64,000 nucleotides of DNA from Mytilus californianus (lineage: Eukaryota), in the NCBI RefSeq assembly GCF_021869535.1, contig NW_026262712.1, positions 62,744,001 through 62,808,000 on the forward strand, in the 5' to 3' direction. A program made the translations under genes and the position numbers. Of the stretch, positions 3,345 through 52,880 are shown piece by piece. The first letter of the stretch is position 1. Each line of letters opens with the position of its first letter. A model generated the notes under the pieces. The model was not told the origin of the DNA. It searched no databases and saw only the letters and a program-made list of their open reading frames with translations.

Positions 3345-3816
3345 GTATGTTTATTTAGGATTAAATGTATTCATTTTCAAGATAAAACAAAACAATTGTT
3401 TGTCAGTTATATCATCGATCGTTAATTCAAATTTAAAAAAAAAAAATTCTTCCCAAATATATATCGTCATCGGGTTTCACTTGGACAATGTCACATTTAA
3501 TTATTTAAATACATTATTTTTTTATGTTATATAAGGAAATGAAATAGGTTCTTTATTCAGCACCCCTTTATTCTTTACTGATTTTTTACCTTTTTTTCTC
3601 TTCTTTATTAGTTTTTGTATATTTTTTTCTATTTTTTTTTTTTCTTTTTGTTAACCATACGTTCTACACTTTTTGCCCAGTATTCTGTTTTCTCATTTCT
3701 GTAAAACCTATTCAGACCATCATTGGATATGTATATATCAAATCGTTGACAAAAAGAAAAAACCTCACTTCAATTAAAAAAAAGGATTACCAATGCATTA
3801 TATGTTTAATGCAAAG

Positions 3817-20957: not shown

Positions 20958-23849
20958 CTGTTATAAAAATATAGTTCATGAGAAAAGCATACATGTAAAA
21001 AACAATCAAATTGTCGAAAGTCATGCGTATACGAAGATGAGAGCAATCATCACGTTCACATCAAGTCAGCTTAAAAAGTATAATGTATTAAAAAATATCT
21101 GTTCAGTTTTCTGAACGGCAATCTGAACGGCAAATACGAGTAATGTTAGCTTGGAGAAGAGACTTGGTTGTAGACTGGTCATACCTATTGAATTGTATGC
21201 AATAAATTCTTGTTTTGATGGTTTGCTTTGGTTTGTATAGTTTCAGAAGTATACTAAATTCGCATAAAAACTTGAGAATTTTTACGGTTGACATAACAAG
21301 TATCCAGATAACAATTTAACAAATAGATTAAACTGCTTTTTATGATTCATTTTTATACACTCGAGTCAATACTAGATTTTACTACTTGTAAGCAATCCAG
21401 GCTTACAATCCTCAGGCACTAGTCTCAGTAAAAAATTATATGTATACCTTTATTTAACACAACCTTCTATAAAGTTTCTTGAAACTAATATCAATTCTTC
21501 CAATGACAAAAATAGGCGTGTGATAAACCCCGTTTTGCAAATTATTTAATGTTGATTTAGAACATAACAAGTTTCAGTGGGATAGACATCCTCTGAATCA
21601 AAATATAACGGGAGTAGCGACCGAGTGTCATTTTTCAAAAATAAGAGTTGTGCACCTTGTGTTATATTAGGTTATATATGTAAAAAAAAATCTTTTGCAT
21701 TGTTAATCATTAAAATATATATATATTTTGCACTGTTTGTTCATTGCTCCACACTCGAAATTATAAATTATAGAAACATACAGGATACAGTGTGTGTTGG
21801 AGAGGAGTTAATTATTTCATATCTAAGAAAAAACGTTCGAAAATTTCAATAATGAAGATATAATGAATATAAGCAATTACGAACATTTAAATGTATAGTG
21901 AGAAGCAAAGACTAACTTGGCATCAAGGAACTAGCCAAGTTTATTCATTCTTGATTTCAGCTAAAGGCAAAGCTGTGCAGAAAAAAAATATGTATTACAA
22001 TATACAAATTTTATTTTCCCTAAAAAGCTTTAAAGGTGCTTTGCAGTATCATAAAGTATGCCAGTTTTGTTACTTTGTTTATTTGTGGGATTCTGCGGAT
22101 TAGGTGGAGTTTTTTGTTCATTTTAAACCTTTAATTAATTTCTTATACTGTCATTACTAAAAGTTCCAGTTATATAATTACTACTAATATGACACAAGTA
22201 CAACTAAACCGGCTCGTGAACCATAATGACAGTCTGTAATGTCGGTATTGGAAATCTTTCAAATGCAGAGAATAGCGTCAAACACCTCTCAATTTTTTTA
22301 ATAAGTTAAAAATGTTAAATTTATCCATCACATTTTTTATTATCAGGCCATCGGGTCGATGTATAATTGAATATGTTATACCGGTCTATAGTGTGCAGAC
22401 CATAACTATGTTGAACTCTAGATGGTTTTGTTTTGTGTGTCATAGTGTTGCTGCTTGATTGAAATATACCCTTTTATTCATATCCATGCTTTTATTTGTC
22501 ATGAAATTTTCAACATTATTTAGAAAATCTTTGATTTTTAAAATTTCCTCTGTTCACATTTTAATGCTGATGGTTCTAAATATGAAAAAAAGTATAAAAA
22601 AAATTCTCAACTCCAAGGCAAATTCAAAGAGGGGAGGTCCATAAATTCTAACAAAATTAAACGCTTTGAAACAACGGAACAAGTGAAAAACTACTGCCAT
22701 ATTCCCGACTTGGTACAGGCATTTCCTAAGAAAACGGTTGGTTAAACCTGGTTTTATAGCTAGCTAAACCTCCCGCGTGTATGACAGTTGTTTATAGTTC
22801 CGTTATATTGACAAATTTGGGTAAGCACCCCAAACAGACATAATAGGTTAATGTGACAATAATTGGGATCCAGCAGTCAACAATGTATAAACATGTTTCA
22901 CAGACATACAACACCACTAACTAAAAAATCCAAACAAACATACAAATTAATCTAACAAAAAAGGTGTAGTAAATAGTAATAACTCATCATAGATGCCAAG
23001 ACCAAAACTTTATACGCCAGACGCCAGACTTGCGTTTCATCTACAAAAGACTCATCAGTGACGTAAATTAGACAATGACGTCACCACCAACAAAAACGTT
23101 TTTGTCGTTGATGTTACATACCGTATATAATACTAGTATAAATTTTCTCGATAAAGGGAAAATTAATTAAATAAAAACACAAGGGTAAACAAAATAGACA
23201 CACCACTATAACAACCTTATGTGTCCAAATCCACTCTAAGACATAAGCCCGGATTTACTAATATATTTCTACAAATTTATCTCAGCATGTTATCATTAAT
23301 CTGTTATAGATAAATTATGTGGTCACACTTTCTTTAGGATTCACTAATTATAACCAGATGTCAGTAAACCACAAAATGTACAAGAACTTTATCAGAAAAT
23401 GTTTTTGTATAAATCAAATATTATTCTGTTTTTTCTGTCCAGGTTTCATCGTGGTATTTTCAAGTCTTTCTGAAAAAAAATATGAAATTTGAAAAAAAAA
23501 GTTATTATTAAAAATGAAAATTAATAATACTAAGATAAAAGTATGAAAAATTTAGTTTATTTCAATATTATGGACAGCCTTCCCCCATTCATATGCAATA
23601 ATTTTGTTCATCAACTGTAGATATTTATTCCTAATATTTATTAAACTTAAAAAAACATACAATATAAAATGTATAAAATTAATGGTACCTTTAATCTAAA
23701 TTAACTTTGTATTGACTTATTAATAAATATTTTTTTCTCATTTTTGATATAAACTACATTTATTCAAACTGTTGTTAAAGTGATTTCTGAGAAAAAAAAA
23801 TAATGCTATATACGATTAGCCAAACCTTGACAAAGTATTTGATCTATAT

Positions 23850-24106
23850 CATAGGTACTTAGGGACAGGACAACTTTTAAACCCTCCCTCTTTTTTCCAA
23901 ATTATTTTATTTTGCATTAATTTAAAATATTTTCATATTTTTCTGTATTATGCAGACATAAATGTGTTAGAAATAACTTTTATTTGCTATTTGCTATCAA
24001 TTCCAACCTTTCTATCCACAGCGTGAAATTAATAGAAAACAAAACAAACGGATGTTTGCAAAAAAGGGGGAGGGCAAAAAGATTGTTCTGTCCCCAAGTA
24101 CCTATG
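23850..24106. mobile_element. Small MITE nested in the 3' region of the Academ-like element
   Basis: TIRs CATAGGTACTTAGGGACAGGACAA and reverse complement CATAGGTACTTGGGGACAGAACAA (22/24), flanked by AT on both sides. Confidence 0.7.
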
Positions 24107-24188
24107 ATCTACGCATGATGGAGCTATATTTCTAAATTCAAAATGATTTCTAAAATTCAAGAACAATGTATAATAATTAAATTTAAAC

Positions 24189-27100
24189 TTACTTTGGAGA
24201 AGATGCTTGAGGTTTTAGCTTCCATTTCTTTGGCGTTGTGGAGTCCTAGGGATTTTTCTCTTTGGCAATTTCTTTTTGGCTAAATTCATCTTCTGCAGTA
24301 GTTCATTTTCAGGGAACAAAAGTTTTCCCTTTATGTCTTTAGCAAAAGATTCAGGTCCAAAGTTGTATTCAATTTCCCCAGACTGCAATTTTAGTAGATA
24401 TCCCTCAACAAGAAACTCCGGCATTGGTTCAAATTGAAGACCTGCTGACAGGTAATACTGTATGAGACAATCTACATTTTTTGCAAGTGTTTAAACAACA
24501 CATTTAGGTGGCATCCACAGTTGAGCATTTTGCTGGACTCCTTTACTCCTCAAGGTTGGCATTTTTATAGACATCTGACGTACTTCTTCGTATGTAAGTT
24601 TTGATGCGTCATACAGCTTTGGACAGTAAAGATATTTGATGAACTCTGTATAATGATCTGCATCAAAATTTACAGAAACAACTTTCCCTTCCTTAGTATG
24701 AATGGTAACTAAACCTTCTCTGAATGTTGTCTTCCTCATAAAAAGGTCAACTGTTGAAGAATGAGAAATCTGGTAGAACTCTGGCAAAAAGTCATTCCCT
24801 CCTAAACTTAATATAATGGCATTCTTCATTCCAATAAACTTTTCTGATGTGAAATTTTCTATCATTAAAATTATTTTAGTTACGTTGTAAATGTCATAGA
24901 CCTGATTTGGTTTTCTAAGGATGACGTAAACTTCATTTTTGAATGTCCCATTTTCTGTTCCCGGCCAAAGATGTGATACTGCAAACAAATGAACTACAAC
25001 GGCATCAATATCTCCTGATAAAACAATACTAACACATGATTCTTTAGGTTTGAGACTGTTGCAATATTCCATTAGCCAGTCAATCTGTGACATCTCAGCT
25101 TCTCCTTTATTTTGACGGATACTGTCCAATAAATCATGCTCTTGATATCCACCTACTTCTTTGAATACAGCACGAACTGGTGTACAGAAACAATGGCAGG
25201 TACATTTCCTTTTTTTCACAATTACACGGTGTCATTTGCAGCTCACTGTCTATGTCCAAAGTGATGGTTTGCTTTAGTCTAACTGCGTTATGTTCTTTGC
25301 TAGATAAGTGCTTGTAATAACCTTTCCTTCTGTTGTTGATATAAGGGATGTTTTATCAACTTTTTCAGCACTAAGTACTTCTTCTGCGGTCTTAAGGTGT
25401 GATTGTTTTTGGTTTGTTTTCCTCTGAGCTTTAAAGTCATCAGGGGTGAAATTGTACTTTTCTTCACAGATCGCAAGATGCTTTAGAAGGGGAAGTTGAT
25501 GTTTAATCTTTTCTACAACATCTTTTCCAATATAATTCAGATATTCATTTCCTGTATGTGCAAAAGATGAAAATTTGATTCCTGCAAATTCTAATGTAGC
25601 ATATGTTGTAGAGCTGGCTAAAGATGGAAGAATAACTTTGCTACCTAGAATGACTGTTCCGTCACTTTCTAGCTTTCCCTTTCCATTGTCTTCGTCAAGG
25701 TGTTGTTGTTCCTGGTTGGTATAAGTTTGGATTATGATACTTAAAAGGGCCTTTTGAATGCTCTGTGATTTCTGTACTTTGGGTTTTGAGCAATCTGGCT
25801 TTACTATAGATTGACAAAGATTCATCTGTGATGATATATGATTGATTTGTTTGGACTGTTTTGCAACTTCTTTATTTCTTTTATCTTCTTTAATTTCTCT
25901 TTCTGTTTTTGCTGTCTGTTGTCTCTTTAATGGGATGTGGCGAATTGTAACTCCTTTTGATTGCTTAAGATTTTGTACCAAAGTTTTTGGACCTGTTATG
26001 TTGCTTAAATCAGGAATGTCTGTTTTGTCAAAGGCAAATAAATTATTGTTGGCAACATACTTTTTAATTAAAAATTCACCAGCTTCTTTTGAATGTTGAT
26101 CAAGAATTGATTCTGGAAGATTATCAGGTTTAGGTTCGTACATGTTATATAAATTCTTGTTTGGTATAGTTGATATTCCTCCTCGTCTTAATATCAGACC
26201 TGTAATTCGCAGAATGTATACCATATCAGTTCAATTTAAAGTTATGCCTAGTATGTCTGGTAGAGACTTTTCTTTTTCTTTATGTTCATTATCTTTTTCT
26301 GTAATACTTCTGTGAACATCATTTAAGAGTCAATCAATGACATTCGTGGTACAACCGATTCCATTGTAGCGCCGGACCTAAATGCTTTTATAACATCTTG
26401 ATGATCCATCTCTCTCTGTGCATCAAGGGCAAAATTTGTACCGGTACCTTTGTGGGGAATAGTAAACAATGCCATTTTCATATTCTTGTAGAAAGGACCA
26501 CACTTGAGATGTGCATGTAGCAGTTTAGTGCAGTAGGCTGCATATGATGATGCACCATTCAGAAAAGAAATGGTAATGATGACTTCACAGCTGCCAGCAA
26601 TAAGTGGTAACCATTCCTCCCTCCTAGTCTCTCTGACAATGCAATGGCACTTATTTCGTCATAATGTTCCATCATATCAGCATGTAAGGCAAACGTTCCA
26701 TTTCTTGATTTTCCTTTCTCCATAAACTCTTGCAATTGAAGTTCCCACTTAGATCCTACAGTATTATTAGCCAGAATATCTTTTTGAAAGGCTTCTGCTT
26801 CTTGTAAGGAAAGAGTTTGCATGAAGGAACAAATGAATGCCAAGTGAAGTGACAAAGAAAGGCGACGAATGTACTTTGTTGCTTTATCAATGTGGTCAGA
26901 GTTGATCAGTTTCTTCCAGTCTTTAACATCATCATCACGCATATATTTAAGTATATGAATGAGACCTGCATGTTGGTATGCACTGCAAAGGTTGTTTATT
27001 TTGGATTTTCTAAGAAGCAGTAAAGGGAACTCTGGCAGAAAGTTTTCGTACTGTTTGTTCTGTTCTCTAAGTTTTATCAAATTACTTCCTATTTTGTTGT

Positions 27101-27473
27101 CAGGGCAACAGAGGATCTTTTCATGATTATGAAGGTTACTTGCATGATCAGTCTTGACAAGAATGTCATCAAGTGTCTGCCTCAACTTTCCAATGTCGTC
27201 ATCCCTTCCAGTAGCTGGTGGCGGATGAAGTGTCAACATCACAGGTGGTGTAAATTGCTCAAAACCTAAAGTTCTTAGAATATGGTCCTGTTTGTCATCT
27301 TCTTCGTCATATAAAATGGGTGTGATATCAAATGAATCATCTAGTGACATGTTCTGGAAATCAGGAATGTCTGTTCTGTCGATCTCAAGGTCTGTATCAA
27401 GAGCTTCAAGTTCTATATCTATTCCATCAAAAATTTCTTCCAACTCATTCTCTCTTTCTTCTTCATCATCAAC
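24189..27473 (-). pseudogene. Academ-like transposase gene, exon 3, duplicated copy
   Basis: Paralogous to 28320-31608 and preceded by a partial exon 2 (27827-27966). Private lesions near 26570, 26325, 26230, 25215, 24491 and 24235. Confidence 0.8.
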
Positions 27474-27979
27474 CTGTAAAGACATATCATATCCCTTTAA
27501 AGGATTGAAATAGTTGCCACTTGATTACAATCATATGTGTGTTCCAAAAAAATATACATTGCAATTTTTCAGTTAATGAGTAATTCAAATATGCTAATTC
27601 TTATCAATTAAGAAAAGGGATGGATGATAACGGTTCATATATGTACCTAATGCTATTTTTTAGATAATAATTCTCCATGGTTTATAGACAGGTACTGAAA
27701 GTAATCATAAGAGTTTCCTTAAAAATTAAAAAGTTCTGAAATGACACGTGTCGGACTTATCATTACATATTAAATAGTCTTTATCGAATATGAATTTGTA
27801 ATTCAGTCAGTTTATTATGACTATACCTGGTTATAGTAGTCGATGGTCTTATTGACATCTTCCTCTGGTGTGCAGGGAGTTAAAGCAGGTGAGCCTGGAG
27901 CGTCCACAACAACAAGATGTGAAAAAGATACTTCAAGCTCTTGTTCAGGTTCAGAAGCAGGGTCGTATTTGATCTATAT

Positions 27980-28236
27980 CATAGGTACTTAGGGACTTTT
28001 AAACTTTTAAACCCTCCCTCTTTTTTCCAAAATATTTTATTTTCCATTAATTTAAAATATTCATACTTTTCTGTATTATGCAGACATCAATGTGTTAGAA
28101 ATAACTTTTTTTTTGCTATTTGCTATCAATTCCAACCATTCTATCCACAGCGTGAAATTAACAGAAAACAAAACAAACGGATGTTTGTAAAAAAGGGGGA
28201 GGGCAAAAAAAATTATTCTGTCCCCAAGTACCTATG
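27980..28236. mobile_element. Duplicated copy of the nested MITE
   Basis: Same as 23850-24106, with the left TIR partly eroded. Confidence 0.7.
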
Positions 28237-28319
28237 ATCTACGCATGATGGAGCTATATTTCTAAATTCAAAATTGATTTCTAAAATTCAATAACAATGT
28301 ATAATAATTAAATTTAAAA

Positions 28320-31300
28320 TTACTTTGGAGTAGATGCTTGAGGTTTTGACTTCCATTTCTTTGGCTTTTGTGGAGTCCTAGGGGTTTTTCTATTTGGCAA
28401 TTTCTTTTTGGCTAAATTCATCTTCTGCAGTAGTTCATTTTCAGGGAACAAAAGTTCTCCCTTTATGTCTTTAGCAAAAGATTCAGGTCCAAAGTTGTAT
28501 TCAATTTCCCCAGACTGCAATTTTAGTAGACATCCCTCAACAAGAAACTCCGGCATTGGTGCAAAATGAAGACCTGCTGACAGGTAATACTGTATGAGGC
28601 AATCTACATTTTTTGCAAGTGTTTGAACAACACATTTAGGTGGCATCCACAGTTGAGCATTTTGCTGGACTCCTTTACTCCTCAAGGTTGGCATTTTTAT
28701 AGACATCTGACGTACTTCTTCGTATGTAAATTTTGATGCGTCATACAGTTTTGGACAGTAAAGATATTTGATGAACTCTGTATAATGATCTGCATCAAAA
28801 TTTACAGAAACAACTTTCCCTTCCTCAATATGAATGGTAACCAAACCTTCTCTGAGTTTTGTCTCCCTCATAAAAAGGTCAACTGTTGAAGAATGAGAAA
28901 TCTAGTAGAACTTCGGCAAAAAGTCATTCCCTCCTAAACTTAATATAATGGCAATCTGCATTCCAATAAACTTTTCTGATGTGAAATTTTCTATCATTAA
29001 AATTATTTTAGTTATGTTGTAAATGTCATAGACCTGATTTGGTTTTCTAAGGATGACGTAAACTTCATTTTTGAATGTCCCATTTTCTGTTCTCGGCCAA
29101 AGATGTGATACTGCAAACACATGAACTACAACGGCATCAATATCTCCTGATGAAACAATACTAACACATGATTCTTTAGGTTTGAGACTGTTGCAATATT
29201 CCATTAGCCAGTCAATCTGTGACATCTCAGCTTCTCCTTTATTTTGACGGATACTGTCCAATAACTCATGCCCTTGATATCCACCTACTTCTTTGAATAC
29301 AGCACGAACTGGTGTACAGAACCAATGGCAGGTACATTTCCTTTTTTCACAATCACACGGTGTCATTTGCAGCTCACTGTCTATGTCCAAAGTGATGGTT
29401 TGCTTTAGTCTAACTGCGTTATGTTCTTTGCTAGATAAGTGCTTGCAATTACCTTTCCTTCTGTTGTTGATATTAGGGATGTTTTATCAAATTTTTCAGC
29501 ACTAAGTACTTCTTCTGCGGTCTTAAAGTGTGAAATTGATTGTTTTTGGTTTGTTTTCCTCTGAGCTTTAAAGTCATCTACAGGGGTGAAATTGTACTTT
29601 TCTTCACAGATCGCAAGATGCTTTAGAAGGGGAAGTTAATGTTTGATCTTGCCTACAACATCTTTTCCAATATAATTCAGATATTCATTTCCTGTATGTG
29701 CAAAAGATGAAAATTTGATTCCTGCAAATTCTAATGTAGCATATGTTGTAGAGCTGGTTAAAGATGGAAGAATAGCTTTGCTACCTAGAATGACTGTTCC
29801 GTCACTTCTAACTTTCCCTTTCCATTGTCTTCGTCAAGGTGTTGTTGTTCCTGGTTGGTATAAGTTTGGATTAAGATACTTAAAAGGGCTTTTTGAATGC
29901 TCTGTGATTTCTGTACTTTGGGTTTTGAGCAATCTGGCTTTACTATAGATTGACAAAGATTCATTTGTGATGATATATGATTGATTTGTTTGGACTGTTT
30001 TGCAACTTCTTTATTTCTTTTATCTTCTTTAATTTCTCTTTCTGTTTTTGCTGTCTGATGTCTCTTGAATGGGATGCGGCGAATTGTAACTCCTTTTGAT
30101 TGCTTATGATTTTGTACCAAAGTTTTTGGACCTGTTATGTTGCTTAAATCAGGAATGTCTGTTTTGTCAAAGGCAAATAAATTATTGTTGGCAACATACT
30201 TTTTAATTAAAAATTCACCAGCTTCTTTTGAATGTTGATCAAGAATTGATTCTGGAAGATTATCAGGTTTAGGTTCGTACATGTTATATACATTCTTGTT
30301 TGGTATAGTTGATATTCCTCCTCGTCTTAATATCAGACCTGTAATTCGCAGAATGTATACCATATAAGTTGAATTTAAAGTTATGCCTAGTATGTCTGGT
30401 AGAGACTTTTCTTTTTCTTTATGTTCATTATCTTTTTCTGTAATACTTCTGTGAACAGCATTTAAAGAGTCAATCAATGACATTCGTGGTATTATCGATT
30501 CCATTGTAGCGCCGGACCTAAATGCTTTTATAACATCTTGAAGATCCATCTCTCTCTCTGCATCAAGGGCAAAATTTGTACTGCTACCTTTGTGGGGAGT
30601 AGTAAACAATGACATTTTCATATTCTTGTAGAAAGAACCACACTTGAGATGTGCATGTAGCAGTTTAGTGCAGTAGGCTGTATATGATGATGCACCATTC
30701 AGAAAAGAAAATGGTAATGATGACTTCACAGCTGCCAGCAATAAGTGGTAACCATTCTTTCCTCCAAGTCTCTCTGACAATGAAATGGCACTTATTTCGT
30801 CACATTGTTCCATCATATCAGCATGTAAGGCAAACGTTCCATTTCTTGATTTTCCTCTCTCCATAAACTCTTGCAATTGAAGTTCCCATTTAGATCCTAC
30901 AGTATTATTAGCCAGAATATCATTTTGAAAGGCTTCTTGTAAGGAACGAGTTTGCATGAAGGAACAAATGAATGCCAAGTGAAGTGACAAAGAAAGGCGA
31001 CGAATGTACTTTTTTGCTTTATCTATGTGGTCAGAGTTGATCAGTTTCTTCCAGTCTTTAACATCATCATCACGCATATATTTAAGTATATGAATGAGAC
31101 CTGCATGTTGGTATGCACTGCAAAGGTTGTTTATTTTGGATTTTCTAAGAAGCAGTAAAGGGAACTCTGGCAAAAAGTGTTCGTACTGTCTGTTCTGTTC
31201 TCTAAGTTTTATCAAATTACTTCCTATTTTGTTGTCAGGGCCACAGAGGATCTTTTCATGATTATGAAGGTTACTTGCATGATCAGTCTTGACAAGAATG

Positions 31301-31608
31301 TCATCAAGTGTCTGCCTCAACTTTCCAATGTCGTCATCCCTTCCAGTAGCTGGTGGCGGATGAAGTGTCAACATCACAGGTGGTGTAAATTGCTCAAAAC
31401 CTAAAGTTCTTAGAATATGGTCCTGTTTGTCATCTTCTTCGTTATATACAATGGGTGTGATATCAAATGAATCATCTAGTGACATGTTCTGGAAATCAGG
31501 AATGTCTGTTCTGTCGATCTCAAGGTCTGTATCAAGAGCTTCAAGTTCTATATCTATTCCATCAAAAATTTCTTCCAACTCATTCTCTCTTTCTTCTTCA
31601 TCATCAAC
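28320..31608 (-). pseudogene. Academ-like transposase gene, exon 3, copy contiguous with the 5' exons (transposase core and PIN/XRN-like nuclease)
   Basis: cttttcag acceptor. Motifs LCGPDNK, EFPLLLLRK, FALDAERE, EFAGIKF, ICEEKY, KGEAEM, SSGDIDA, LGGNDFLP, WMPP. Frameshifts near 29806 and 29410; stops at 29636-29638 and 28902-28904. Confidence 0.8.
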
Positions 31609-31961
31609 CTGAAAAGACATATCATATCCCTTTAAATGATTGAAATAGTTGCCACTGGATTACAATCATATGTGTGTTCCAAAAAATTATACATTGCAAT
31701 GTTTCAGTTAATGAGTAATTCAAATATGCTAATTCTTATCAATTAAGAAAAGGGATGGATGATAACGGGACATATATGTACCTAATGCTATTTTTTAGAT
31801 AATAATTCTCCATGGTTTATAGACAGGTACTGAAAGTTATCATAAGAGTTTCCTTAAAAATTAAAAAGTTCTGAAATGACACGTGTCGGACTTATAATGA
31901 CATATTAAATAGTCTTTATCGAATATGTATTTGTAATTCAGTCAGTTTATTATGACTATAC

Positions 31962-32197
31962 CTGGTTATAGTGGTCGATGGTCTTATTGACATCTTCCTC
32001 TGATGTGCAGGGAGTTACAGCAGGTGAGCCTGGAGCGTCCACAACAACAAGATGTGAAAAAGATACTTCAAGCTCTTGTTCAGGTTCAGAAGCAGGGTCG
32101 TTCACTCTAAAGCTTGAAAATGATTCTTCTAAATTCTGATTTTCTGGCTCCTCAATTTCCCTTTGCATTTGAACTTTGATGGTATTCTAAATTCCTT
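31962..32197 (-). pseudogene. Academ-like transposase gene, coding exon 2 (acidic linker)
   Basis: tttcag acceptor and GTATAG donor; 236 nt, phase 1 to 0; premature TAG at 32187-32189. Confidence 0.7.
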
Positions 32198-32643
32198 CTG
32201 AAATTAAAAATTGATTGGTTTTTAGTTTTATGAATGAGCTTTTTTTATATTATAATATGACCTTCTTATTGTTAGCTAAAAGAAAATGGTCTTTCTTTTG
32301 CTTAAATATTTAGTTTTTCCATTCTTATTTTATGAAATCAAGATGAAACTATTACCGTGAAATGATAACTTGCAAAGATGGAAAATAATCTTTTAAACAC
32401 AAAAATGAAAAAAAAAATATCTGATTTAATTCATTAAATTCTGATTCATGACATAATCTTAACAATGGTTTAACTTCATTTCGGAAGAGTAAGAGAAATG
32501 CCAGTTCAGTTTATGCATGCATTTTGCTCTCAAACAAAGCAAAAAATGATAATGTTTTTGTCATGAATATGCATGAAATATTTGCTGCTGGACATTAATC
32601 ATATATTAATCTATTTAACATTTAGATGAGGTAAAGTACTTAC

Positions 32644-34531
32644 TTTCAAAGACCTCAGTCCATAAAGTTGGCAATCCCCAGGTAAACAATTGATGGCACC
32701 TTGTTAGCACTCTCTTCTCCTCAGCATTTAGACATAATACTTCGGTCTCAAAATCTGTTTTCTGCAACTCTATGTCTTCTTTACATTTGCATGTAGTTGT
32801 CCCATCGCATATAGTGTGATCATGCCAATTTTCTATTTCTTTTGCTTCTTTTGGAATTCCTTTGATTGTAATAGGTAAGGTACCTATCTGCATAGATCTA
32901 GATTCCCCTGGTTCTGGGTCCTTGTGATATTTAAGTCGTACCAAACTGTTCATCATAATAATTATTATACAATCTCGGAGGCTGACTTTGACTTTTTCTA
33001 TTCCTGCTGCAGTTTCGTACAACATTTCATATTTCCTCAGGTAGGTATTGAAGTAGCAGAAATCGCTATTTGCCTTTTCTTTCATCCTCTGCTCGCTCTC
33101 ATGTAAGCTTAATGTTGCTCCGGAAAAAGATGTTACAGAAGACACTGTGTTGATTGACTGATAGTTCATTGCAAGTTCTTGTGAGTTGGCATCTTGAAGA
33201 AGTCAAATATAATTTGTGTTTGTCAAATTTAAGAGGGAGTCAAACAAACTATATAATTTCCTAAGCTTTAAATTCAAAAGTTGGCCTACATTTTCTGATT
33301 TTCTTAAACTTTCTTTGTTGATGTAGCTCTCTAATATAATCTGACCAATAACTGGTACACCCATTGTCCATTCTTTCAATATATCAAAAGATGTCCAGTC
33401 TAATGACTCTATTGTGCTTGTTCCGTAACAGGACAGTTTGATGAAGAAACATCGTTTTCAAAATCCGTATCAGCTACTTGCTATACATGAAATATTTGTT
33501 CATTTAGTATTTTCATCATTATATTGTCCCGCAACTCAATCGTACAGTTCTGCCAAATTTGTCGGTATACAATTCAAATGCACCTTTACTGAGAAATATA
33601 ATTTCAGCACAGTTATCGTTGTGTTTTTTTCTTATATGCGCATCAAAAAGAAGACAGATATCTGAAATTTGTACTTCAGTTAAATCACCAGATTCTACAA
33701 AAAGATGAAGTGCAGGAGGATGCTTACAAGTACGTGTACAGTCAACAGAAATTACTTTGTCTATTGCGAAATTTTCTGGTATCAAATTAAGAAGTTGTGC
33801 ATCTAGAACCTCTGGAAAATGCCTCTTGTTTCCCACAATTGAAACGGCTTCTTCGCATTGACTTTTTTTCCTTCTCTGAATTCTTTCAACAGTGCTTAAT
33901 TTTGAAGATTTTAAAAGTATAGACTGAACTTCACAAGCTTCCTTCAAACTGTCTAAGAATTTTGATTTTTGTTCAACGAGTTTTTCATAATTATCTAAAT
34001 CATGGTAGTAATTGCTCTTCCCAAAATGGTGTTCAAATAAACAGATTTTCTTCCATTCCAAATTATTAAAGTCATCTTTATAGTTGTTAATTAAAGTGTC
34101 TATTTGAGATTCGTCTATTTCTAGTGTTTGCAGAATATGGTTTTCTATATTTTCACTTCGGTAAAAGGTTTTTACAACTTTGACGTAGATATCTTTTATT
34201 GTAAGTTCACTTGATATATTTTTTCCAAAGCATTTCTTTTCAATTTGGTGCACAATTTTCTTACAAATATAGAGGTGTTCAGTGTGATGGAAACAATATC
34301 TTAATATAGATGATCTTACACTTATACGGAAATGACCATCAACTTCTTTTAAACCATTAAAAACTCCTTTTGCACATTCAATTTTTTTATGTCCCTAATC
34401 TTATCTGAGGGGCGGTGTTGGTTACGCAAAAACAAAAGAAAATCTTCTAGTTAAACCCATTTGTTTTCTAAGTCATTTTCATCATGGTGAATTGTTAGTG
34501 AACTAAATGAAGGGATGCTGCAAGATTCCAT
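32644..34531 (-). pseudogene. Academ-like transposase gene, coding exon 1 (disrupted)
   Basis: ATG at 34531 just after a ttgtag acceptor; stop at 34451-34453; frameshift in an A7 run near 34385; further lesions near 33530, 33420 and 33207; GTAAGT donor at 32643. Includes track ORFs 33519-34253 and 32615-33169. Confidence 0.7.
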
Positions 34532-35479
34532 TTCTACAAAAAGCAGAGGTAAATATGTCATTTTACATGTTACATGGTTTAGCGTTTGGTGTCATTTGTA
34601 AGTCCCTTGTCCAAAAAAATCTATTTGATTATAAGAAATGACAATATTAATTATACCTCCAAATTACCATCCCTCTTATACCCCATAAATAATACATGAG
34701 TTTTCTTCTATAACACCCTTCTTATTATTGACAACCATAATTATGTCATTCATATTCTAAAAAATGTGTAATATTTGCTACTGTGCATAAAAAATTAACA
34801 TTTACTCTAGTAATTGATTTCTGGCATTACCTATAATAAATTACATTAAAAAAAATAATCCCATTTGCACAAGGATTTGTATCCTTGCATTTGCAATATT
34901 AACATTAATTATAATATAATTACCTTAATAGTTTTCTTTTTTCATGTCAACCTCTGTCTCCAGCTTTCACATCAAATTTTAAGAAGTCTTCAAATCTTTT
35001 TCTATTTCTATATTAATAATCACTACAAATCATTTATACACATTTATAACTGTACTATAAAATAAATGCTGAAGATAGTATATATTAAGTAATATGATAT
35101 GCATGTGACCAGTTATTCAGGAGATTAAGATAAACAAACCCAGCATGATACATGGTCTGGGGTAATTGGCATTTACATGATGTCTGATAAGACCACAGCT
35201 ACAAAGTAGCTGTAGATTCGGGCTTATATCTTAGAGTGAATCGCACCTCAGGACACATCTGCACCAGGAATGCGACACACAGTTAAAAAGCCAAAAGCTA
35301 GCCGATGGCGGATAAAAGCCGAGTCACGTCAAAAGACATACTACCGAAAGAAACACAATAGCACGAAGACAAATAGCGGTGAAAATAAAATCAAATAAAA
35401 AGATACACGACTTCAGTACCTAGAATCTAAAACTCAAGACCATCTTGTATTATTTGTGAAGTAGACACTGAATATTTAT

Positions 35480-40969: not shown

Positions 40970-43900
40970 AACAAGAAATAATTGTAACAGGATGCCGTTA
41001 CGAAGTCTCACAAACAAAGCCCCCATAATTCGTCATTCCCATGGTCTCCTGACATTGGGCAAAGTCCAGTGGATATTGGTTTGGTCTAGTAAAGTGATAT
41101 GCATATGTGACACCTAGGAGATTGACCCTGTATGTCATTCAAATGTTTTTGAAATGATGAACAGAAATAAATATGGTTTAGGTGTGGGTATCTCGATCGT
41201 TTACAAGTTCTCAAGCAGGAGGGGTGGGGTGATCCCAGGGACTCCCCCTATAATTCATTTGATTTGTTATATTGTCCCATACATGAAAACATATGGTTTA
41301 GGGGTGGGGATCTCGACCATTTCCAAGTTCTCAAACAGGAGGGGTGGGGTGACCCTAGGGACTCCCCAAATATTTCTTTTGATTTGTTATATTGTCCCAT
41401 ACATGAATATATATAGTTTAGGGGTGGGGAACTTGACTGTTTACAAGTTCTAAAACAAGAGGGGGTGGGGTGTCCCAATGGACTCCCCCTATATTTCATT
41501 TGATTTGTTTTATTGTCCAATACATAACAAGAAATAATTGTAACAGGATGCTGTTACGAAGTCTCCCAAAACAAAGCTCCAATAATTCATCATTCCCATG
41601 GTCGCCTGACATTGGGCAAAGTCCAGTACAAATTGGTTTGTGATATGCATAAGTGACGCCTATGGATTAACCCTGTATGTCATTCAAATCTTCTTGAAAT
41701 GACGAACAGGAATATATATTGTTTAGGGGTGGTGATCTCGACCGTTTACAAGATAAAAGCACATTCTCAAATTGAAGGGGGGTGGGCTGATCCCCAGGGA
41801 CTCGCTCTTTATTTCATATTATTTGTTTTTTGTCCCATACAAGAATTTATATGGTTTAGGGGTGGGGATCTCGACCGTTTTCAAGTTCTTAAACAGGAGG
41901 GGTTTGGGGGTGACCCCAGGGGACTCGCCTTTTATTTCATTTGATTTGTTTTATTGTCCCATACAAAAATATATTTGGTTTCGGGGTGGGGATCTTGACC
42001 GTTTACAAGTTCTCAAAAAGAAGGGGGGTTGGGGTGACCCCCCTGAACTTCCCCTATATTTCATTTGATTTGTTATATTGTCCCATACATGAATATTTAT
42101 GGTTTAGGGGTGGGGATCTTAACTGTTTACAAGTTCTCAAACAAGAGGGGGTTGGGTGTCCCCATGGACTCCCCCAATATTTCATTTGATTTGTTTTATT
42201 GTCCCATACATGACAAGAAATAATTGTAACAGGATGCTGTTACGAAGTCTCCTAAAACAAAGCTCCAATAATTCGTCATTCCCATGGTCGCCTGATATTG
42301 GGCAAAGTCCAGTACACATTGGTTTGTGATATGCATTAGTGACGCCTATGGATTAACCCTGTATGTCATTCAAATGTTCTTGAAATGACGAACAGGAATA
42401 TATATTGTTTAGGGGTAGTGATCTCGACCGTTTACAAGATAAAAGCACATTCTCAAATTGAAGGGGGTGGGCTGATCCCCAGGGACTCGCCCTTTATTTC
42501 ATATTATTTGTTTTTTTTGTCCCATACAAGAATATATATGGTTTAGGGGTGGGGATCGCGACCGTTTACAAGTTCTTAAACAGGAGAGGGTAGGGGTGAC
42601 CCCAGGGGATTCGCCTTTTATTTCATTTGATTTGTTTTATTGTCCCATACAAGAATATATATGGTTTAGGGGTGGGGATCTTGACCGTTTACAAGATTTC
42701 AAAAAGAAGGGGGGTTGGGTTACCCCCGTGGACTTCCCCTATATTTCATTTGATTTGTTTTATTGTCCCATACAAGAATATATATGGTTTAGGGGTGGGG
42801 ATCTCAACCGTTTACAAGTTCTCAAACAGGAGGGGGTAGGGGGTGACCCCAGGGGACTCGCCATTTATTTCATTTGATTTGTTTAATTGTCCCATACAAA
42901 AATATATTTGGTTTCGGGGTGGGGATCTTGACCGTTTACAAGTTCTCAAAAAGAAGGGGGGTGGGGGTGACTCCCCTGAACTTCCCCTATATTTCATTTG
43001 ATTTGTTTTATTGTCCCATACAAGAATATATATGGTTTAGGGGTAGGGATCTCGACCGTTTACAAGTTTTTAAAAAGAAGGGGGTAGGGTTACCCCCATG
43101 GACTTCCCCTATATTTCATTTGATTTGTTTTATTGTCCCATACAAGAATATATATGGTTTAGGGGTGGGGATCTCGACCTTTTACAAGATAATAGCACAT
43201 TCTCAAATTGAAGGGGTTGGGGTGACCCCAGGCACTCACCCTATATTTCATCTGATTTGTTTTATTGTTCTGTGATCATTTCTGAAGACTGCGTGTGTCT
43301 ATCACTTACAATTTTCAAGTTAAAGTCATTTGAAAATCTTGAAAAATTAAATCTCATAGGTTTCTATAGTAAAACCCTCCCTTCTTTATGCCCCTTAAAT
43401 TACCCCTTAATAGACCTCAATGCACAAACGATTAGTTGATGGCTCCCCTAGACATGTTAATCTAACATTTTATGATAAGTAACTCTGACAAGGGGTTTTG
43501 GAGAACCGCTGCGGACAAGTTCATCTTTAAAGTGGCGGAAGAAGAAAAAGAAAAAGAAAAAGAAAAAGAAGAAGAAGAATAATAAAAATAATAAGAACTG
43601 AGCAAAAACAATAAGTCTCCAAACTTTGTTTGGGATACTTAAATATATATGATTTAGGGGTGGGGATCTCGACCATTTCCAAGTTCTCGAACAGGAGGGG
43701 TGACCCGAGGAACTCCCCTTATATTTTATTTGATTTGTTATATTGTCCCATACATGAATATATATGGTTTAGGGGTGGGGATCTTGACTGTTTACAAGTT
43801 CTCAAACAGGAGGGGGTGGGTGTCCCCAGGGACTCCCCCTAAATTTCATTTGATTTGTTACATTGTCCCATACATGAATATATATGGTTTAGGGGTGGGG

Positions 43901-44470
43901 ATCTCGACCGTTTACAAGTTCTCAAACAGGAGGGGGTGAGGTGACCCTAGGGACTCCCCCTATATTTCATTTGATTTGTTTTATTGTCCCATACATGAAT
44001 ATATATGGTTTAGGGGTGGCGATCTCGATCATTTTCAAGTTCTCAAACAGGAGGCGGTGGGACGACACCGGGGACTCCCCAACATTATTTTCATTTGATT
44101 TCTTTTACTGTCCCATACAAGTATATATATTGTTTAGGGATGGGGATCGCGACGGTTTACAAAATAAAAGTACATTTTCAAATTGAATGGGGTAGGGACG
44201 ACCCCAGGGACTCACCCCATATTTTGGTTGATTATTTTTATAGCCCTGTTCAAATTACTGAAGACTGCATGTGTCTATCACTGTTTTCGAGAAATAGTCA
44301 TTTGAAAATTTAAAAAAATAAAATCCCATAGGGTTCTATAGTAAACCCCTTCCTTCTTCAGGCCCCTCCAAATACCCCTAAATAGACCCCAATGCACAAA
44401 CAAAAGATTAATGGCTCCGCAAGACATGTTAGTCTAATATTTTATGAAACCCTAAGTAAATCTGACAAAC
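40970..44470 (+). mobile_element. Concatemer of Helentron-associated non-autonomous (HINE-like) units carrying a ~122-bp satellite
   Basis: Three AACAAG heads (40970, 41526, ~42213) each followed by monomers spaced 122-124 bp. A 3' module at 43270-43643 has a GAA-type microsatellite and the hairpin aagtctccaaac-ttt-gtttgggatactt. More monomers and a truncated second 3' module follow. Confidence 0.75.
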
Positions 44471-45060
44471 GGTCAAAGTTGTCTTTTTAGACGGTTTGAG
44501 TGGATTCGGTCCGACTTGTCTCGGGGACTAATTGTCCACATTACTTAAAAGATCCCATCAACGTCGATTTCCGCATCTGTTTCATGACCTCGTTTCATTT
44601 AGAAAATAACAACAACCTTATTTGGCAAGATAAGTTAAAAATTACCGCCCACTTATAACACTTTATTTCCTCTATTATAGAGATTTTTTGTACATGAACA
44701 ATATTCCTGCGCATTTTGCCATTTGGGAAATATAAACGACTTGTAATTACCGATTTTCGGCGATGAAATATTTCATACAATTGTTCTTTGACATCGTAGT
44801 CAAAAGCACAGGGAATAATAAACTACGTACGGATTTCTATTGAGCACTACTTCCTATGTGCAACTTCAAAAGTTTTGGGTAGTTCGACGATCATTTAAGG
44901 TTTTTTCTGGTCATATTTTTGTATTCCAGAAATAAAAGTATTAAAAAAATGTTCAATTAGTTATAAATAACATAATAGACAGCTAGATAATAACAATGGC
45001 ACGTATTTCAGAATTTATTGGGTAGAACAAAAATCTAGGGTGCTCGCATAAGGCAGCTTA

Positions 45061-45250
45061 ACTGCATAAAAAACCACACAAAAACAAAGGAACAGCGCTT
45101 TTACTGTAGTTCTTCATCTCAAAGTCACAGTGTGGCCTTCAACATGGAGCTCACCTCACTGCAAGTTTAAGACGGCCCCCTAGCACCGGCTTGAGCGTAA
45201 TTCTTTGCAAAAACAATTTGGATAGACTTTGTAAGATGTAACACCACCAA
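45061..45250. repeat. Second copy of the dispersed repeat at 6868-7090
   Basis: Direct sequence similarity; it terminates the reading frame of the unidentified exon on the minus strand. Confidence 0.7.
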
Positions 45251-46378
45251 ATCGGGTGGAACCGAACTTGCTTTCACTGAATTCTCACCTATTCCTTCGT
45301 ACTTTAGTAGACTACCTAAACGGTCGTTGTGGTGATTCAAAAGCAAATTCTCACTTCCTTTTATCTTGTCAAATATAAACCGATTAAAGACATGAACTAT
45401 TAGCTTCCGTTTCAGTCCTTCCTGTCAAAGTTTACACCAATATGATACATTTTGGCTTAATGGTACTCTCAAAAGAGCAGAATAGTCATGTATTATACCC
45501 CCGCTTTGAAAAAGGGGGGTATACTGTTTTACCTCTGTCTGTCCTTCCGTCAGTCCTTCCGTCAGTCCATCCGTCAGTCCGTCCGTCCCATGAATATTTT
45601 CGTCGCATTTTTCTCAGGAACTACTTGACAAGGATTTCTGAAGTTTGGTTTCAGGGTTTATATGAGCAAGTTACACCGTGTGATGCGTTTTCAGATTCAT
45701 CACTCAACAACTTCCTGTTTACCGAACACTTGTATTATTTAACACATGATAGCCAAGTTGAAAATTTGCGTCACATTTTTCTCAGGAACTACTTGACAAG
45801 GATTTCTGAAATTTGGTTTCAGGGTTGATATAAGTACGTTACACCGTGTGATGCGTTTTCAGATTAATCACTCAACAACTTCTTGTTTACCGAACACTTG
45901 TATTATTTTACACATGATAGCCAAGTTGAAAATTTTCGTCACACATTTTTCTCAGGAACTACTTGACAAGGATTTCTGAAATTTGGTTTCAGGTTTTATA
46001 TAAGTAAGTTACACCATGTATTGTGTTTTCAGATTCATCACTCAACAACTTCCTATTTACCGAACACTTGTATTATTTTACACATGATAGCCAAGTTGAA
46101 AATTCTCGTCACATTTTTTCTCAGGAACTACTTGACAAGGATTTCTGAAATTTGGTTTCAGGGTTTATATAAGTACGTTACACCGTGTGATGCGTTTTCA
46201 GATTCATCACTCAACAACTTCTTGTTTACCGAAATATTTCGGCGGGGGTATTATCAGTGAGCAGTAGCTCACAGTTTTACTTGTTTAAATTGGTGCAGAA
46301 AAACATTATCGGAAGCAAACGTTTTAACCATTGATGTTACTGCTTCATCATCCAATAAGAACCCCAAGCATTTTCCCA
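45251..46378 (-). pseudogene. Exon of an unidentified gene, interrupted by a HINE insertion and carrying a premature stop
   Basis: tatacag acceptor at 46379. Removing 45493-46285 restores one frame: VGKCLGFLLDDEAVTSMVKTFASDNVFLHQF-I-HDYSALLRVPLSQNVSYWCKL*QEGLKRKLIVHVFNRFIFDKIKGSENLLLNHHNDRLG. TGA at 45425-45427. Confidence 0.6.
45493..46285 (-). mobile_element. Complete HINE/pearl-like element with about 3.7 tandem 168-170 bp core repeats
   Basis: Minus-strand AACAAG start; subterminal inverted repeat atacccccgc/gcgggggtat; terminal hairpin ataccccc...gggggtat; (CCGT/CAGT)n microsatellite; monomer marker ctcaggaact at 45613, 45781, 45951 and 46120. Confidence 0.85.
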
Positions 46379-48951: not shown

Positions 48952-50100
48952 ATTAAGTCTCCCAAACAAAGTTTGGAAGACTTATTGTTTTTGCTCAGTT
49001 ATTCTTCCTCTTCTTCCACCTCTTTTTCAAACTTCAACTTGTCCGCAAGCATTTCTCAAAAACTTCTAGTTAGATTATTTAATACGGGCTCCACCATATA
49101 TTAGACTAATATGTATTGTCGTGCAATCAGTGTTTTGTTTGTGCATTGCGGTCTATACAAATGGGTACTATGAGGAGCCAAAAGAAGAGAGGGTTTTACT
49201 ATAGAACCTTTTGGGATTATGACTTGAGAACAGTTCGAGATAGACACATGAGGTTTTCAGTAATTTTTATGGGACCATATGGCCTATACTTCAATGACAT
49301 TGACCTTCAACCTTGAACATCATTTTTCAATTTACACAAAATAAAAAATATTTGGAAAATCTAAAGAATTGAAAATATTTATATATAATAACACAAACCA
49401 AATGAGATATAGCGCGAGTCCCCAAGGGTAAAGCCTCTCCCTGCCATTTAACAATGTTCTAATATCTTGTAAATGGTCGAGATCCCTACCCCTAAACAAC
49501 ATATATAGTTCTTTTTTTCATGTCAAAATGACTTGAATGATATATAAGGGGAGTCCCTAGTGGTCATCCCCACCTTCTGTCTTTTGAGAATGTTCAAATA
49601 TATTGTAATGATTAAGATCCCTACCCTAAACCATACTATATACCAGTTTGTCATGCCAAAAATATTTAAATGATATACAGGTCTAGTCCCTAGGGGCATT
49701 TCCCAGGCCCCTGTCATTTGAGAATGTTCAAATATCTTTGTAAATTGTCAAGATTTTCATCCTAAACCATTTATATTCCTGTTTGGAAATACCATGAAGA
49801 TTTGAGAATGATACATAGAGTGAATCCCCAGGAGTCACCTAAACTCTGTCACTTAAGAATGTTCAAATATCTTGCAGATGGGTCAAGATTCCTACTACTA
49901 AACCATATGTATTCCAGTTTTTTTTATGATTTTTTTGAAATATAGGTTTAGTCCAAAGGGGTCATTCCTAGTCCCTGTCATTTGAGATTGTTAAAATATC
50001 TTTGTATGTTGTCAAATATCCAACCCTAAACATTCCTGTTTGTTATTTTAAGTTGATTTGAATGATATATAGAGGTAGTCCAATGGGGTCATCCCAAGCG
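48952..50100 (-). mobile_element. Minus-strand HINE of the same family as 40970-44470, with diverged satellite monomers
   Basis: attaagtctcccaaacaaagtttggaagacttattgtttttgctcag is the reverse complement of the 43600-43643 terminus; reverse-complement monomers follow (accctaaaccat, gagatccctacccctaaac). Confidence 0.75.
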
Positions 50101-52471
50101 CTGTCACTTATCACCTCCACCCCTACCATTTAATAGAATATTTGAATATCAAAGTTACAAGTTCTGAGGTAGCTGTAAAGTCGTAAATATGATTTGAAAA
50201 TTCGCAAATATGAATTATGAAGTTGTAAATATAAGTTGTATTGTCGTAACTAGACGTTTAAATGAATTTGATATCGAAATTATGCAATTTAAAGTCGTAA
50301 GTAAAGTAACGAAATCACTAGGAAATTGTATGAATTTATAAATATAAGTTTTATCATCAGTAATTTATGTTAAAATGAAATTGTAAATGTTATTTGATAA
50401 GTCATAAATAAGAAATATATATATCGACTAAGTATATAAAAGTAAGTTGGAATCGTAGTTTTTCGATTACAAATGCTTGTTACAAAATCGTAAACAAATC
50501 CTTAAAGAAGTTTTAAATTTTTATAATGTGATATAAACATCTTTATTGATGTTAAAAGGGTTTCTTTTTTAATGAATTGTTTTTTAAGAAAGACATTTTT
50601 ACTTTAGTTGTCTTACGAACGAAATTGTAGGATATCTTGTTTCCGAGGAGAATTGAAAGATAGCTTGTTTTCGAGGAGAATTGCAGGACAACTTCTCACT
50701 AGTTTTTTTTATTTGTTTCAATCAGATCATAGAAGCATTATATTGATATTGCTTCCATGATCAGAGCGTCAAGATCGGAAAGTTTATTAGAAACTAATGG
50801 ATTTCGAATACGAATTTTTAAGTTCAAACATCCCAAACGCTGTCACTTATCACCTCCACCCCTACCATTTAATAGAATATTTGAATATCAAAGTTACAAG
50901 TTGTGAGGTAGCTGTAAAGTCGTTAACATGATTTGAAAATTCGCAATTATGAGTTATGAAGTTGTGAATATAAGTTGTATTGTCGAAACTAGACGTTTAA
51001 ATGAATTTAATATCGAAATTATGCAATTTAAAGTCGTAAGTATAAGTAACGAAATCACTAGGAAATTATTTGAATTTATAAATATAAGTTTTATCATCAG
51101 TATTATATGTTAAAATGAAATTGTAAATGTTAGTTAATAAGTCGTAAATATGAAATGTATATCGACTAAGTATATAAAAGTTTGTTGGAATCGTAGTTTT
51201 TCGATTATAAATGCTTGTTACAAAATCGTAAAAAAATCCTCAAAGAAGTTTTAAATTTTGTTAATGGGATATAAACATCTTTATTGATGTTAAAAGGGTT
51301 GCCTTTTTACTGAATTGTTTTTTTAGAAAGACATTATTACATAAGTTGTCTTACGAACGAAATTGCAGGATAGCTTGTTTCCGAGGAGAATTGCAAGATA
51401 GCTTGTTTTCGAGGAGAATTGCAGGACAACTTGTCACTAGTTTTCTTTATTTGTTTCAATCAGATCATAGAAGTATTATATTGATATTGCTTCTATGATC
51501 AGATCGTCAAGATCGGAAAGTTTATTAGAACTAATGGATTTCGAATACGAATTTTAAAGTTCAAACTAATTTACATACATTCATGACATCGACATGTTTC
51601 TTATCACCAGATATTGCAGATGTGGAATATTTTCACACATTGTTGTACTTTCATTTCTTTTTTACCTAGAAACCAGATATCCAGGACCAATTTAATTGAA
51701 ACGCAATATACAGCTTTTAGACAGTAAGAATTTGTTTTAATTTTGAAATTGAAACAAAATTTCCCAATGCTAAGAACATTGAAGGCCACATGGCCTACTT
51801 CAAGGTTATAAGATCAATGATCCTTAATGGCATTGACCTTCAACCTTAGACGTCATTTTTCAATTTACACAAATAAAAAATATATTGGAAAATCCGATTT
51901 GATTAAAATCCGATGTTGCGATACGCTACACTAGGGTAGAGAGTATTGTAGCGAAAACTAACAGCTCATTTTAATGAGATTGTTGGAAAATCTAAGGAAT
52001 TGAAAATATTTTTATATAATAAAACAAACCAAATGAGATATAGCGTGGGTCCCCAAGGGTCACCCCACACCCTGCCATTTGAGAATGTTCTGATATCTTG
52101 TAAATGGTCGAGATCCTTACCCCTAAACAACATATATAGTTATGTTTGTTATGTCAAAATGACTTGAATTATATATAAGGGGAGTCCCTAGTGGTCATCC
52201 CCACCTTCTGTCTTTTGAGAATGTTCAAATATATTGTAAGTGGTCAAGATCCCTACCCTAAACCATGCTATATTCCAGTTTGTCATGCCAAAGAGATTTA
52301 AATGATATGCAGGTCTAGTCCCTAGGGGCAATTCCCAGCCTCTGTAATTTGAGAATGTTCAAATATCTTTGTAAATTGTCAAGATTTTCACCCTAAACCA
52401 TTTATATTCTTGTTTGGAAATACCATGATGATTTGAGAATGATACATAGAGTGAATCCCCAGGAGTCACCC

Positions 52472-52650
52472 AAAAGAGGGACGAAAGATACCAGAGGGAC
52501 AGTCAAACTCATAGATTGAAAATAAACTGACAACGCCATGGCTAAAAATAAATAGACAAACAGACAAATAATAGTACAGAAGACACAACATAGAAAACTC
52601 AAGACTAAGCAACACGAACCCCACCAAAAACTGGGGGTGATCTCAGGTGC
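52472..52650 (-). mobile_element. Penelope-like 3' tail inserted in block A'
   Basis: Reverse complement of 4340-4521; absent from the homologous position in block A (~49840). Confidence 0.8.
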
Positions 52651-52724
52651 GTGAGAAACCCTGTCACTTCAGAATGTTCAAATATCTTGCAAGTGGCCAA
52701 GATCCCTACTACTAAACCATATTT

Positions 52725-52880
52725 CCCGTTTGAATGGTTGTACACTAGTAATTTTTGGGGCCCTTTATAGCTTGCTGTTCAGTGTGAGCCAATGCTCCGT
52801 GTTGAAGGCCGTACCTTGACCTATAATGGTTTATTTTTATAACTTGTTACTTGGATTGAGAGTTGTCTCATTGGCACTCA
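52725..52880 (-). repeat. Dispersed non-autonomous repeat (13939 family) inserted in block A'
   Basis: Matches 18050-18225; absent from the homologous position in block A (~49905). Confidence 0.8.

What the first reader, a model, noticed from the sequence alone, without database searches (positions are those of the whole stretch)
23232..35238. Bounded 12-kb DNA transposon of a divergent Academ-like lineage, hidden as seven ORF fragments
Seen: 27-bp TIRs (24/27) with CA...TG ends, an exact AATC 4-bp TSD, and a three-exon minus-strand gene of about 5.4 kb (about 1800 codons) once lesions are bridged. Without the internal duplication the element is about 7.9 kb. Established: AcademX transposons have short (3-4 bp) TSDs and encode a transposase fused to an XPG-type nuclease. 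Inferred: candidate catalytic positions are IIMMNSLVRL (~32941-32960, possibly a decayed DN motif), LCGPDNK (~31227-31247) and FALDAERE (~30549-30570). The His expected in the G-x-x-H position reads PLLL in both copies. The protein is divergent enough that it may be an undescribed clade.
Basis: partly seen in the sequence, partly recalled or inferred. Interest (0 to 1): 0.85.

Follow-up and report, generated by a model that had tools for sequence, protein, structure and literature searches.

The report
Dead mussel transposon with fused nuclease
This is a broken copy of a cut-and-paste jumping gene in a mussel-like genome; it belongs to a divergent branch, found in molluscs and one annelid, that joins the transposase to a nucleic-acid-trimming enzyme, always duplicates four target bases, and still has intact, recently mobile members in other species.

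Summary
Confirmed. Window 23232-35238 is a dead DNA transposon: TIRs 24/27, AATC 4-bp TSD, a 4.13-kb internal tandem duplication (7,877 bp without it) and a three-exon gene of about 5.4 kb. The same family sits at three other sites in Mytilus edulis and M. coruscus; two have identical TIRs and different 4-bp TSDs, one has a stop-free 1,813-aa ORF. Across five families (bivalves, abalone), ends are CA[C/G]TC..GA[C/G]TG and 12 of 14 two-ended copies have a 4-bp TSD; two families have >99%-identical dispersed copies. The transposase folds as an RNase H-type DDE enzyme and its nearest Atlas clusters carry DUF6589; the C-terminal domain is a 5' nuclease (FEN1/XPG/EXO1/XRN superfamily) with XRN-like motifs and no Cys-rich tail. 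The window copy has lost the first catalytic Asp and the invariant His, and decays neutrally (pN/pS 1.03 between duplicates). It works like AcademX; formal membership is likely but untested against Repbase, and DUF6589 HMM hits were absent in 90 members. No empty site found. The scan noted other Academ elements in this genome, not this lineage.

The parts
23228..23231 (.). left copy of 4-bp target site duplication AATC
23232..23258 (.). terminal inverted repeat at the 3' end of the element (27 bp, 24/27 match to the other end)
   Evidence: same TIR in L005, L006
23845..24111 (.). small MITE-like hairpin (about 58-bp arms, 84% complementary) in the 3' untranslated part; also present in L006 and L007
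23835..27964 (-). tandem duplicate (copy A): end of exon 2, intron 2, all of exon 3 and 3' UTR; several stops and frameshifts
28320..31608 (-). exon 3 (copy B): transposase core with second Asp (31236), His-to-Leu change (31152), Glu (30552), and the 5'-nuclease domain (about 28320-30010) with seven conserved acidic residues intact; broken by frameshifts near 29810 and 29420 and stops at 29638 and 28904
   Evidence: folds
31609..31961 (-). intron 2 (GT..AG)
31962..32197 (-). exon 2, acidic low-confidence linker, stop at 32189
32198..32643 (-). intron 1 (GT..AG)
32644..34531 (-). exon 1: N-terminal region and first RNase H strands; first catalytic Asp changed to Asn at 32950; three frameshifts and three stops
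35212..35238 (.). terminal inverted repeat at the 5' end of the element
35239..35242 (.). right copy of 4-bp target site duplication AATC

Best explanation
The stretch is a dead copy of an autonomous cut-and-paste DNA transposon of a divergent AcademX-like lineage of molluscs (and at least one annelid). Shown: one gene encodes an RNase H-type DDE transposase followed by a 5'-nuclease of the FEN1/XPG/EXO1/XRN superfamily; the short TIRs (CA[C/G]TC ends) bound the mobile unit; insertion makes a 4-bp duplication of variable sequence. Inferred from established DDE chemistry: the transposase binds the TIRs, cuts the element out and joins its 3' ends to target phosphates 4 bases apart, and host repair fills the gaps. 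Inferred, my best guess (about 55%): the fused nuclease acts on DNA in cis, trimming the 5' flaps or non-transferred strands left at excision or strand transfer. This copy inserted, lost its first catalytic Asp and the invariant His, then had its 3' half duplicated in tandem, and has decayed neutrally since.
Against: No member matches Pfam DUF6589 by hmmscan (0 of 24 and 0 of 90). That DUF6589 marks Academ transposases rests on my memory, not on a paper read here; the defining paper (PMC7165386) is not held. The Cys-rich tail that I recall for AcademX is absent. No empty site seen. Two two-ended copies lack a clean TSD (L008, L013). The nuclease's substrate is untested.
Confidence: 0.78

Rival explanations
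1. Same transposon, but a lineage separate from AcademX that picked up an XRN-family 5'-3' exonuclease on its own; the domain may act on 5'-phosphorylated RNA (R-loops at the element, or host silencing RNAs) rather than on DNA ends.
For: Foldseek ranks XRN1/XRN2/Rat1 in the first 26 rows (best E 3.4e-6) ahead of Rad2/FEN1/XPG (E 6e-3 or worse); giant-virus XRNs top the viral library (E 1.5e-6); XRN aligns over 327-341 residues against 236-271 for EXO1/FEN1/XPG; motifs GEAE, SGDID and GGNDFLP resemble XRN's (motif equivalence from memory); no Cys-rich tail; no DUF6589 HMM hit.
Confidence: 0.15
2. A member of the CMCT group (EnSpm/CACTA, Chapaev, Transib, Plavaka), which also has CA..TG ends and 2-5 bp TSDs.
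Against: The C(2)C signature between the second Asp and the Glu is not among the conserved residues; no Pfam EnSpm/Chapaev domain hit; RAG1/Transib score below P element, ISCth4, Tn5 and Hermes; nearest Atlas clusters are DUF6589.
Confidence: 0.04
3. A host gene or domesticated transposase with chance flanking repeats.
For: Introns present; no empty site observed at this locus.
Against: Identical TIRs at unrelated loci with different 4-bp TSDs, dispersed near-identical copies in relatives, many stops and frameshifts, lost catalytic Asp and pN/pS 1.03.
Confidence: 0.02

Closest known systems
AcademX (Academ superfamily, nuclease-encoding lineage; Kojima 2020, cited through PMC10045372)
   Same: One protein with DDE transposase plus 5'-nuclease; 4-bp TSD (AcademX: 3 or 4 bp); short TIRs; nearest Atlas clusters carry DUF6589; Academ is abundant in bivalves (PMC10294476).
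   Different: No HMM match to DUF6589 in 90 members; P-x-x-H instead of the G-x-x-H recalled for Academ; nuclease with XRN-like motifs and longer XRN-like structural overlap; no Cys-rich tail, instead a conserved basic TPQKG..STP end; strictly 4-bp TSD and CA[C/G]TC ends; elements 6.9-9.2 kb against a bivalve Academ mean of 5.6 kb.
AcademH
   Same: Probably the same transposase family (DUF6589 neighbourhood).
   Different: AcademH encodes a helicase and makes 9-10 bp TSDs; none here.
P element / hAT / IS256-Mutator transposases (solved structures)
   Same: RNase H DDE core with a large helical insertion between the second Asp and the Glu; best structural matches.
   Different: 7-9% identity; no C/DxxH signature (Pro at that place); no fused nuclease in those; 8-9 bp TSDs (from memory).
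XRN1/XRN2, EXO1, FEN1, XPG 5' nucleases
   Same: Fold and seven-acid active-site pattern.
   Different: 10-14% identity; small Cys cluster inserted after the DSE motif; fused to a transposase.

Membership tests
TIR cut-and-paste DNA transposon | terminal inverted repeats and TSD, repeated at independent loci | tested here: met
   12 of 14 two-ended copies have a 4-bp TSD
TIR cut-and-paste DNA transposon | RNase H-type DDE transposase | tested here: met
TIR cut-and-paste DNA transposon | empty site at this locus in another haplotype | tested here: inconclusive
   loose-end table swamped by a high-copy repeat next to the junction; no paralogous empty site in window or loci
AcademX | TSD of 3 or 4 bp | tested here: met
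   4 bp; criterion from PMC10045372
AcademX | transposase and XPG-superfamily nuclease in one protein, no helicase | tested here: met
   single ORFs of 1,750-1,930 aa
AcademX | sequence homology of the transposase to Academ (DUF6589 used as proxy, link from memory) | tested here: inconclusive
   no hmmscan hit in 24 and 90 members; Atlas features 0.95 and TM 0.57 to DUF6589 clusters
AcademX | phylogenetic placement among Repbase Academ transposases | not testable with these tools
   no Repbase/Dfam sequences available; defining paper not held
AcademX | C-terminal Cys-rich finger (recalled feature, may not be universal) | tested here: not met
   1-3 Cys in the last 120 residues of all 25 full-length members
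AcademH | helicase and 9-10 bp TSD | tested here: not met
CMCT (EnSpm, Chapaev, Transib, Plavaka) | CA..TG ends, 2-5 bp TSD | tested here: met
CMCT (EnSpm, Chapaev, Transib, Plavaka) | C(2)C and H(3-4)H motifs between second Asp and Glu | tested here: not met
   conserved residues there are H865, H976, H982, C1027, H1034, no CxxC (criterion)
hAT/P/MuDR/Kolobok/Dada | C/DxxH signature | tested here: not met
   P-x-x-H in 24 of 25 members (criterion)
Kolobok | TTAA-specific 4-bp TSD | tested here: not met
   11 different 4-mers among 12 TSDs, TTAA twice
XRN exoribonuclease family | nuclease closer to XRN than to FEN1/XPG/EXO1 | tested here: inconclusive
   Foldseek favours XRN; VIA-align ties or favours EXO1

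The most novel reading that the evidence does not exclude
A separate, unnamed lineage of lophotrochozoan DNA transposons that fused a DDE transposase to an XRN-family exonuclease independently of AcademX, and whose nuclease works on RNA, linking transposition to RNA removal or counter-silencing.
Probability: 0.13. Interest if true: 0.72.

Novelty: new variant of a known kind. Interest (0 to 1): 0.42.

Why it matters
Academ is one of the least studied DNA transposon groups and the job of its extra enzyme (nuclease or helicase) is only guessed from TSD length. This lineage is missed by Pfam altogether, so it is probably under-annotated in mollusc genomes, where it also corrupts host gene models (fusions with RidA and UBE2D). 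It supplies intron-free, intact, recently mobile members (the 6,863-bp family L011-L015) with defined ends, which makes the role of the fused 5' nuclease directly testable. The window copy itself is a dead relic of little importance.

Tried and rejected
Pfam scans of window ORFs, full-length relatives and two alignments gave nothing meaningful. PDB sequence searches gave only a spurious IpgC match. Foldseek on the transposase model gave no hit under E 0.001; the wide structural search was needed. Generic TIR scans on distant loci L002, L003, L004, L010, L032 found no convincing ends. My shuffle test for inverted 22-mers counts self-palindromes and the internal hairpin and is not used as evidence. 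Metagenome scan returned 13 mostly short contigs without usable ends. Searches to reach canonical Academ proteins by profile stayed inside the clade. Papers: Kojima 2020 and Yuan and Wessler 2011 are not held; no paper links Academ and XRN or explains DUF6589. Empty-site search failed. Rejected: host gene, CMCT, Kolobok, AcademH (see rivals and membership test).

Full report
Observation. The element runs from 23232 to 35238. Its ends match at 24 of 27 positions and are flanked by AATC on both sides. A tandem duplication of 4.13 kb (23835-27966 and 27965-32101, 96.6% identical) joins through a 2-bp GT microhomology; without it the element is 7,877 bp. The window has no N. Repeats and protein hits point to a Mytilus genome (closest proteins 88-97% identical, M. 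edulis, M. coruscus, M. galloprovincialis); this is inference.

Independent insertions. Two relatives fetched through their proteins carry the same TIR at both ends with unrelated flanks: L005 (M. edulis, TSD TATA) and L006 (M. coruscus, TSD CTAT, 7,819 bp, no duplication). L007 (M. coruscus) has the 5' TIR, has lost the 3' TIR, and holds a stop-free ORF of 1,813 aa, P0049. A sister family about 58% identical has different TIRs (CAGTCA..) with TSD TACA in L001 and no clean TSD in L008. A family 40% identical (P0259) occurs as five dispersed 6,863-bp copies over 99.95% identical in one sample, with ends CACTCC..GGAGTG and 4-bp TSDs in four of five. L009 has CAGTCT ends and TSD TGGA. Three Haliotis cracherodii copies of 9.2 kb, over 99.3% identical, have CAGTCC ends and TSDs CCTT, TGTG, TTAA. 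In all, 12 of 14 two-ended copies, the window included, have a 4-bp TSD of variable sequence, and all five families end in CA[C/G]TC..GA[C/G]TG. The transposon reading is therefore shown, not just inferred.

Gene. Compared exon by exon with P0049, the window gene has three coding exons on the minus strand (34531-32644, 32197-31962, 31608-28320) with GT..AG introns, about 5.41 kb. It is broken by several frameshifts and stops. Codon 32950 is Asn where all 25 full-length relatives have Asp (DNLVRL), and the invariant His of PxLH is Leu in both duplicate copies; the second Asp, the final Glu and all seven nuclease acids are intact. Copies A and B differ with pN/pS 1.03, against 0.15 between L005 and L007, so the copy is decaying neutrally. 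About 31 changes are shared by A and B and 54 and 60 are private, so the His loss came before the duplication.

Nuclease. The model of P0049 1240-1800 is confident (pLDDT 92.7) and belongs to the 5'-nuclease superfamily. Foldseek ranks XRN1/XRN2 first (E 3.4e-6) and FEN1/Rad2/XPG later, and giant-virus XRNs first among viral proteins; VIA-align gives EXO1 13.4-14.0, FEN1 12.6, XPG 12.2, XRN1 12.1-12.3, with XRN aligned over more residues. Named Atlas neighbours are TCR-carrying mollusc clusters, Pox_G5 and XPG, all under 0.9.

Range. A profile search finds 1,111 clusters at 50% identity (E up to 0.001). Named hits are bivalves (Mytilus, Mercenaria, Ruditapes, Mya, Mactra, Dreissena, Tegillarca), gastropods (Haliotis, Littorina) and the annelid Owenia; hits labelled Thiodiazotropha are most likely host-clam DNA in symbiont bins (inference).

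Reads. Four runs of the same species cover the element throughout. No empty site was listed; a very high-copy repeat at about 22,700-23,100 swamps the loose-end table. One contig of another individual crosses the left junction with 30 letters inside, one short of the tool's bridging threshold. One contig in X1 begins exactly at 23835, the first duplicated base, which is what a real duplication junction would cause, but no contig crossing 27964/27965 was listed, and at 35 of 40 listed sites the reads show copy B's letter rather than copy A's. Whether the duplicate is fixed, polymorphic, or two alleles joined in the assembly stays open; it does not affect the identity of the element.

Mechanism. 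Shown: TIR-bounded unit, 4-bp TSD, DDE fold with conserved acids, 5'-nuclease fold with conserved acids, recent mobility in relatives. From established DDE chemistry: excision at the TIRs and strand transfer to target positions 4 bases apart. Inferred: the fused nuclease trims 5' flaps or non-transferred strands in cis (about 55%); it acts on RNA (about 15%); other or accessory role (rest). PMC10045372 likewise ties the short AcademX TSD to the nuclease.

Comparison and verdict. It works like AcademX (one protein, nuclease, 4-bp TSD) and most likely belongs to Academ, but membership could not be tested against Repbase, the DUF6589 HMM does not hit, and the recalled Cys-rich tail is absent. CMCT, hAT/P/MuDR, Kolobok and AcademH signatures are not met. 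Academ is known to be abundant in bivalves, with 100 curated families (PMC10294476), so families of this clade may already be listed without being recognised as a lineage. I score it a new variant of a known kind, interest 0.42: the window copy is a dead relic, but it leads to a coherent, Pfam-invisible lineage with intact members suited to testing what the Academ nuclease does.

Noticed in passing
window 23845-24111 (and arm at 28184-28241): MITE-like hairpin with about 58-bp arms in the element's 3' UTR, shared with L006 and L007; the duplication breakpoint lies 10 bp from its edge.
   Followed up: partly
L011 3610-17341: A full 6,863-bp copy is flanked directly by two inverted partial copies (4.0 and 2.9 kb) of the same element, which looks like insertion of the element into itself.
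   Followed up: partly
L012 7446-14870: The copy sits inside a small element with 35-bp inverted ends (CCCAGATAGC..).
   Followed up: no
L007 10001-24349; protein P0257: Public gene models fuse this transposon ORF to host genes (RidA in P0049, UBE2D in P0257); probably prediction errors.
   Followed up: partly
L029, L031: Haliotis copies lie within the spans of host genes (fn3/kinase; RPN2 and a GPCR), presumably in introns.
   Followed up: no
C-terminus of all 25 full-length proteins (window about 28320-28400): Conserved basic tail with TPxK and STP motifs, possibly nuclear localisation and CDK sites.
   Followed up: no
window 34532-34550: A splice-acceptor-like sequence ends 3 nt before the start codon, suggesting a non-coding first exon nearer the 5' TIR.
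   Followed up: no
L005 2615-5569: The M. edulis copy carries an insertion of about 2.95 kb in its 5' part.
   Followed up: no
window 22700-23100: Very high-copy repeat just left of the element.
   Followed up: no
window 2294-3358 and 59806-61062: MFS transporter ORF and a reverse-transcriptase ORF.
   Followed up: no
window 41161-46233 and 49352-53713: Tandem arrays of 120-124, 168 and 133 bp units, the 124- and 133-bp units related in opposite orientation.
   Followed up: no
proteins P0002, P0016, P0310, P0341: Clade members annotated as Candidatus Thiodiazotropha; likely host-clam contamination of symbiont bins.
   Followed up: no
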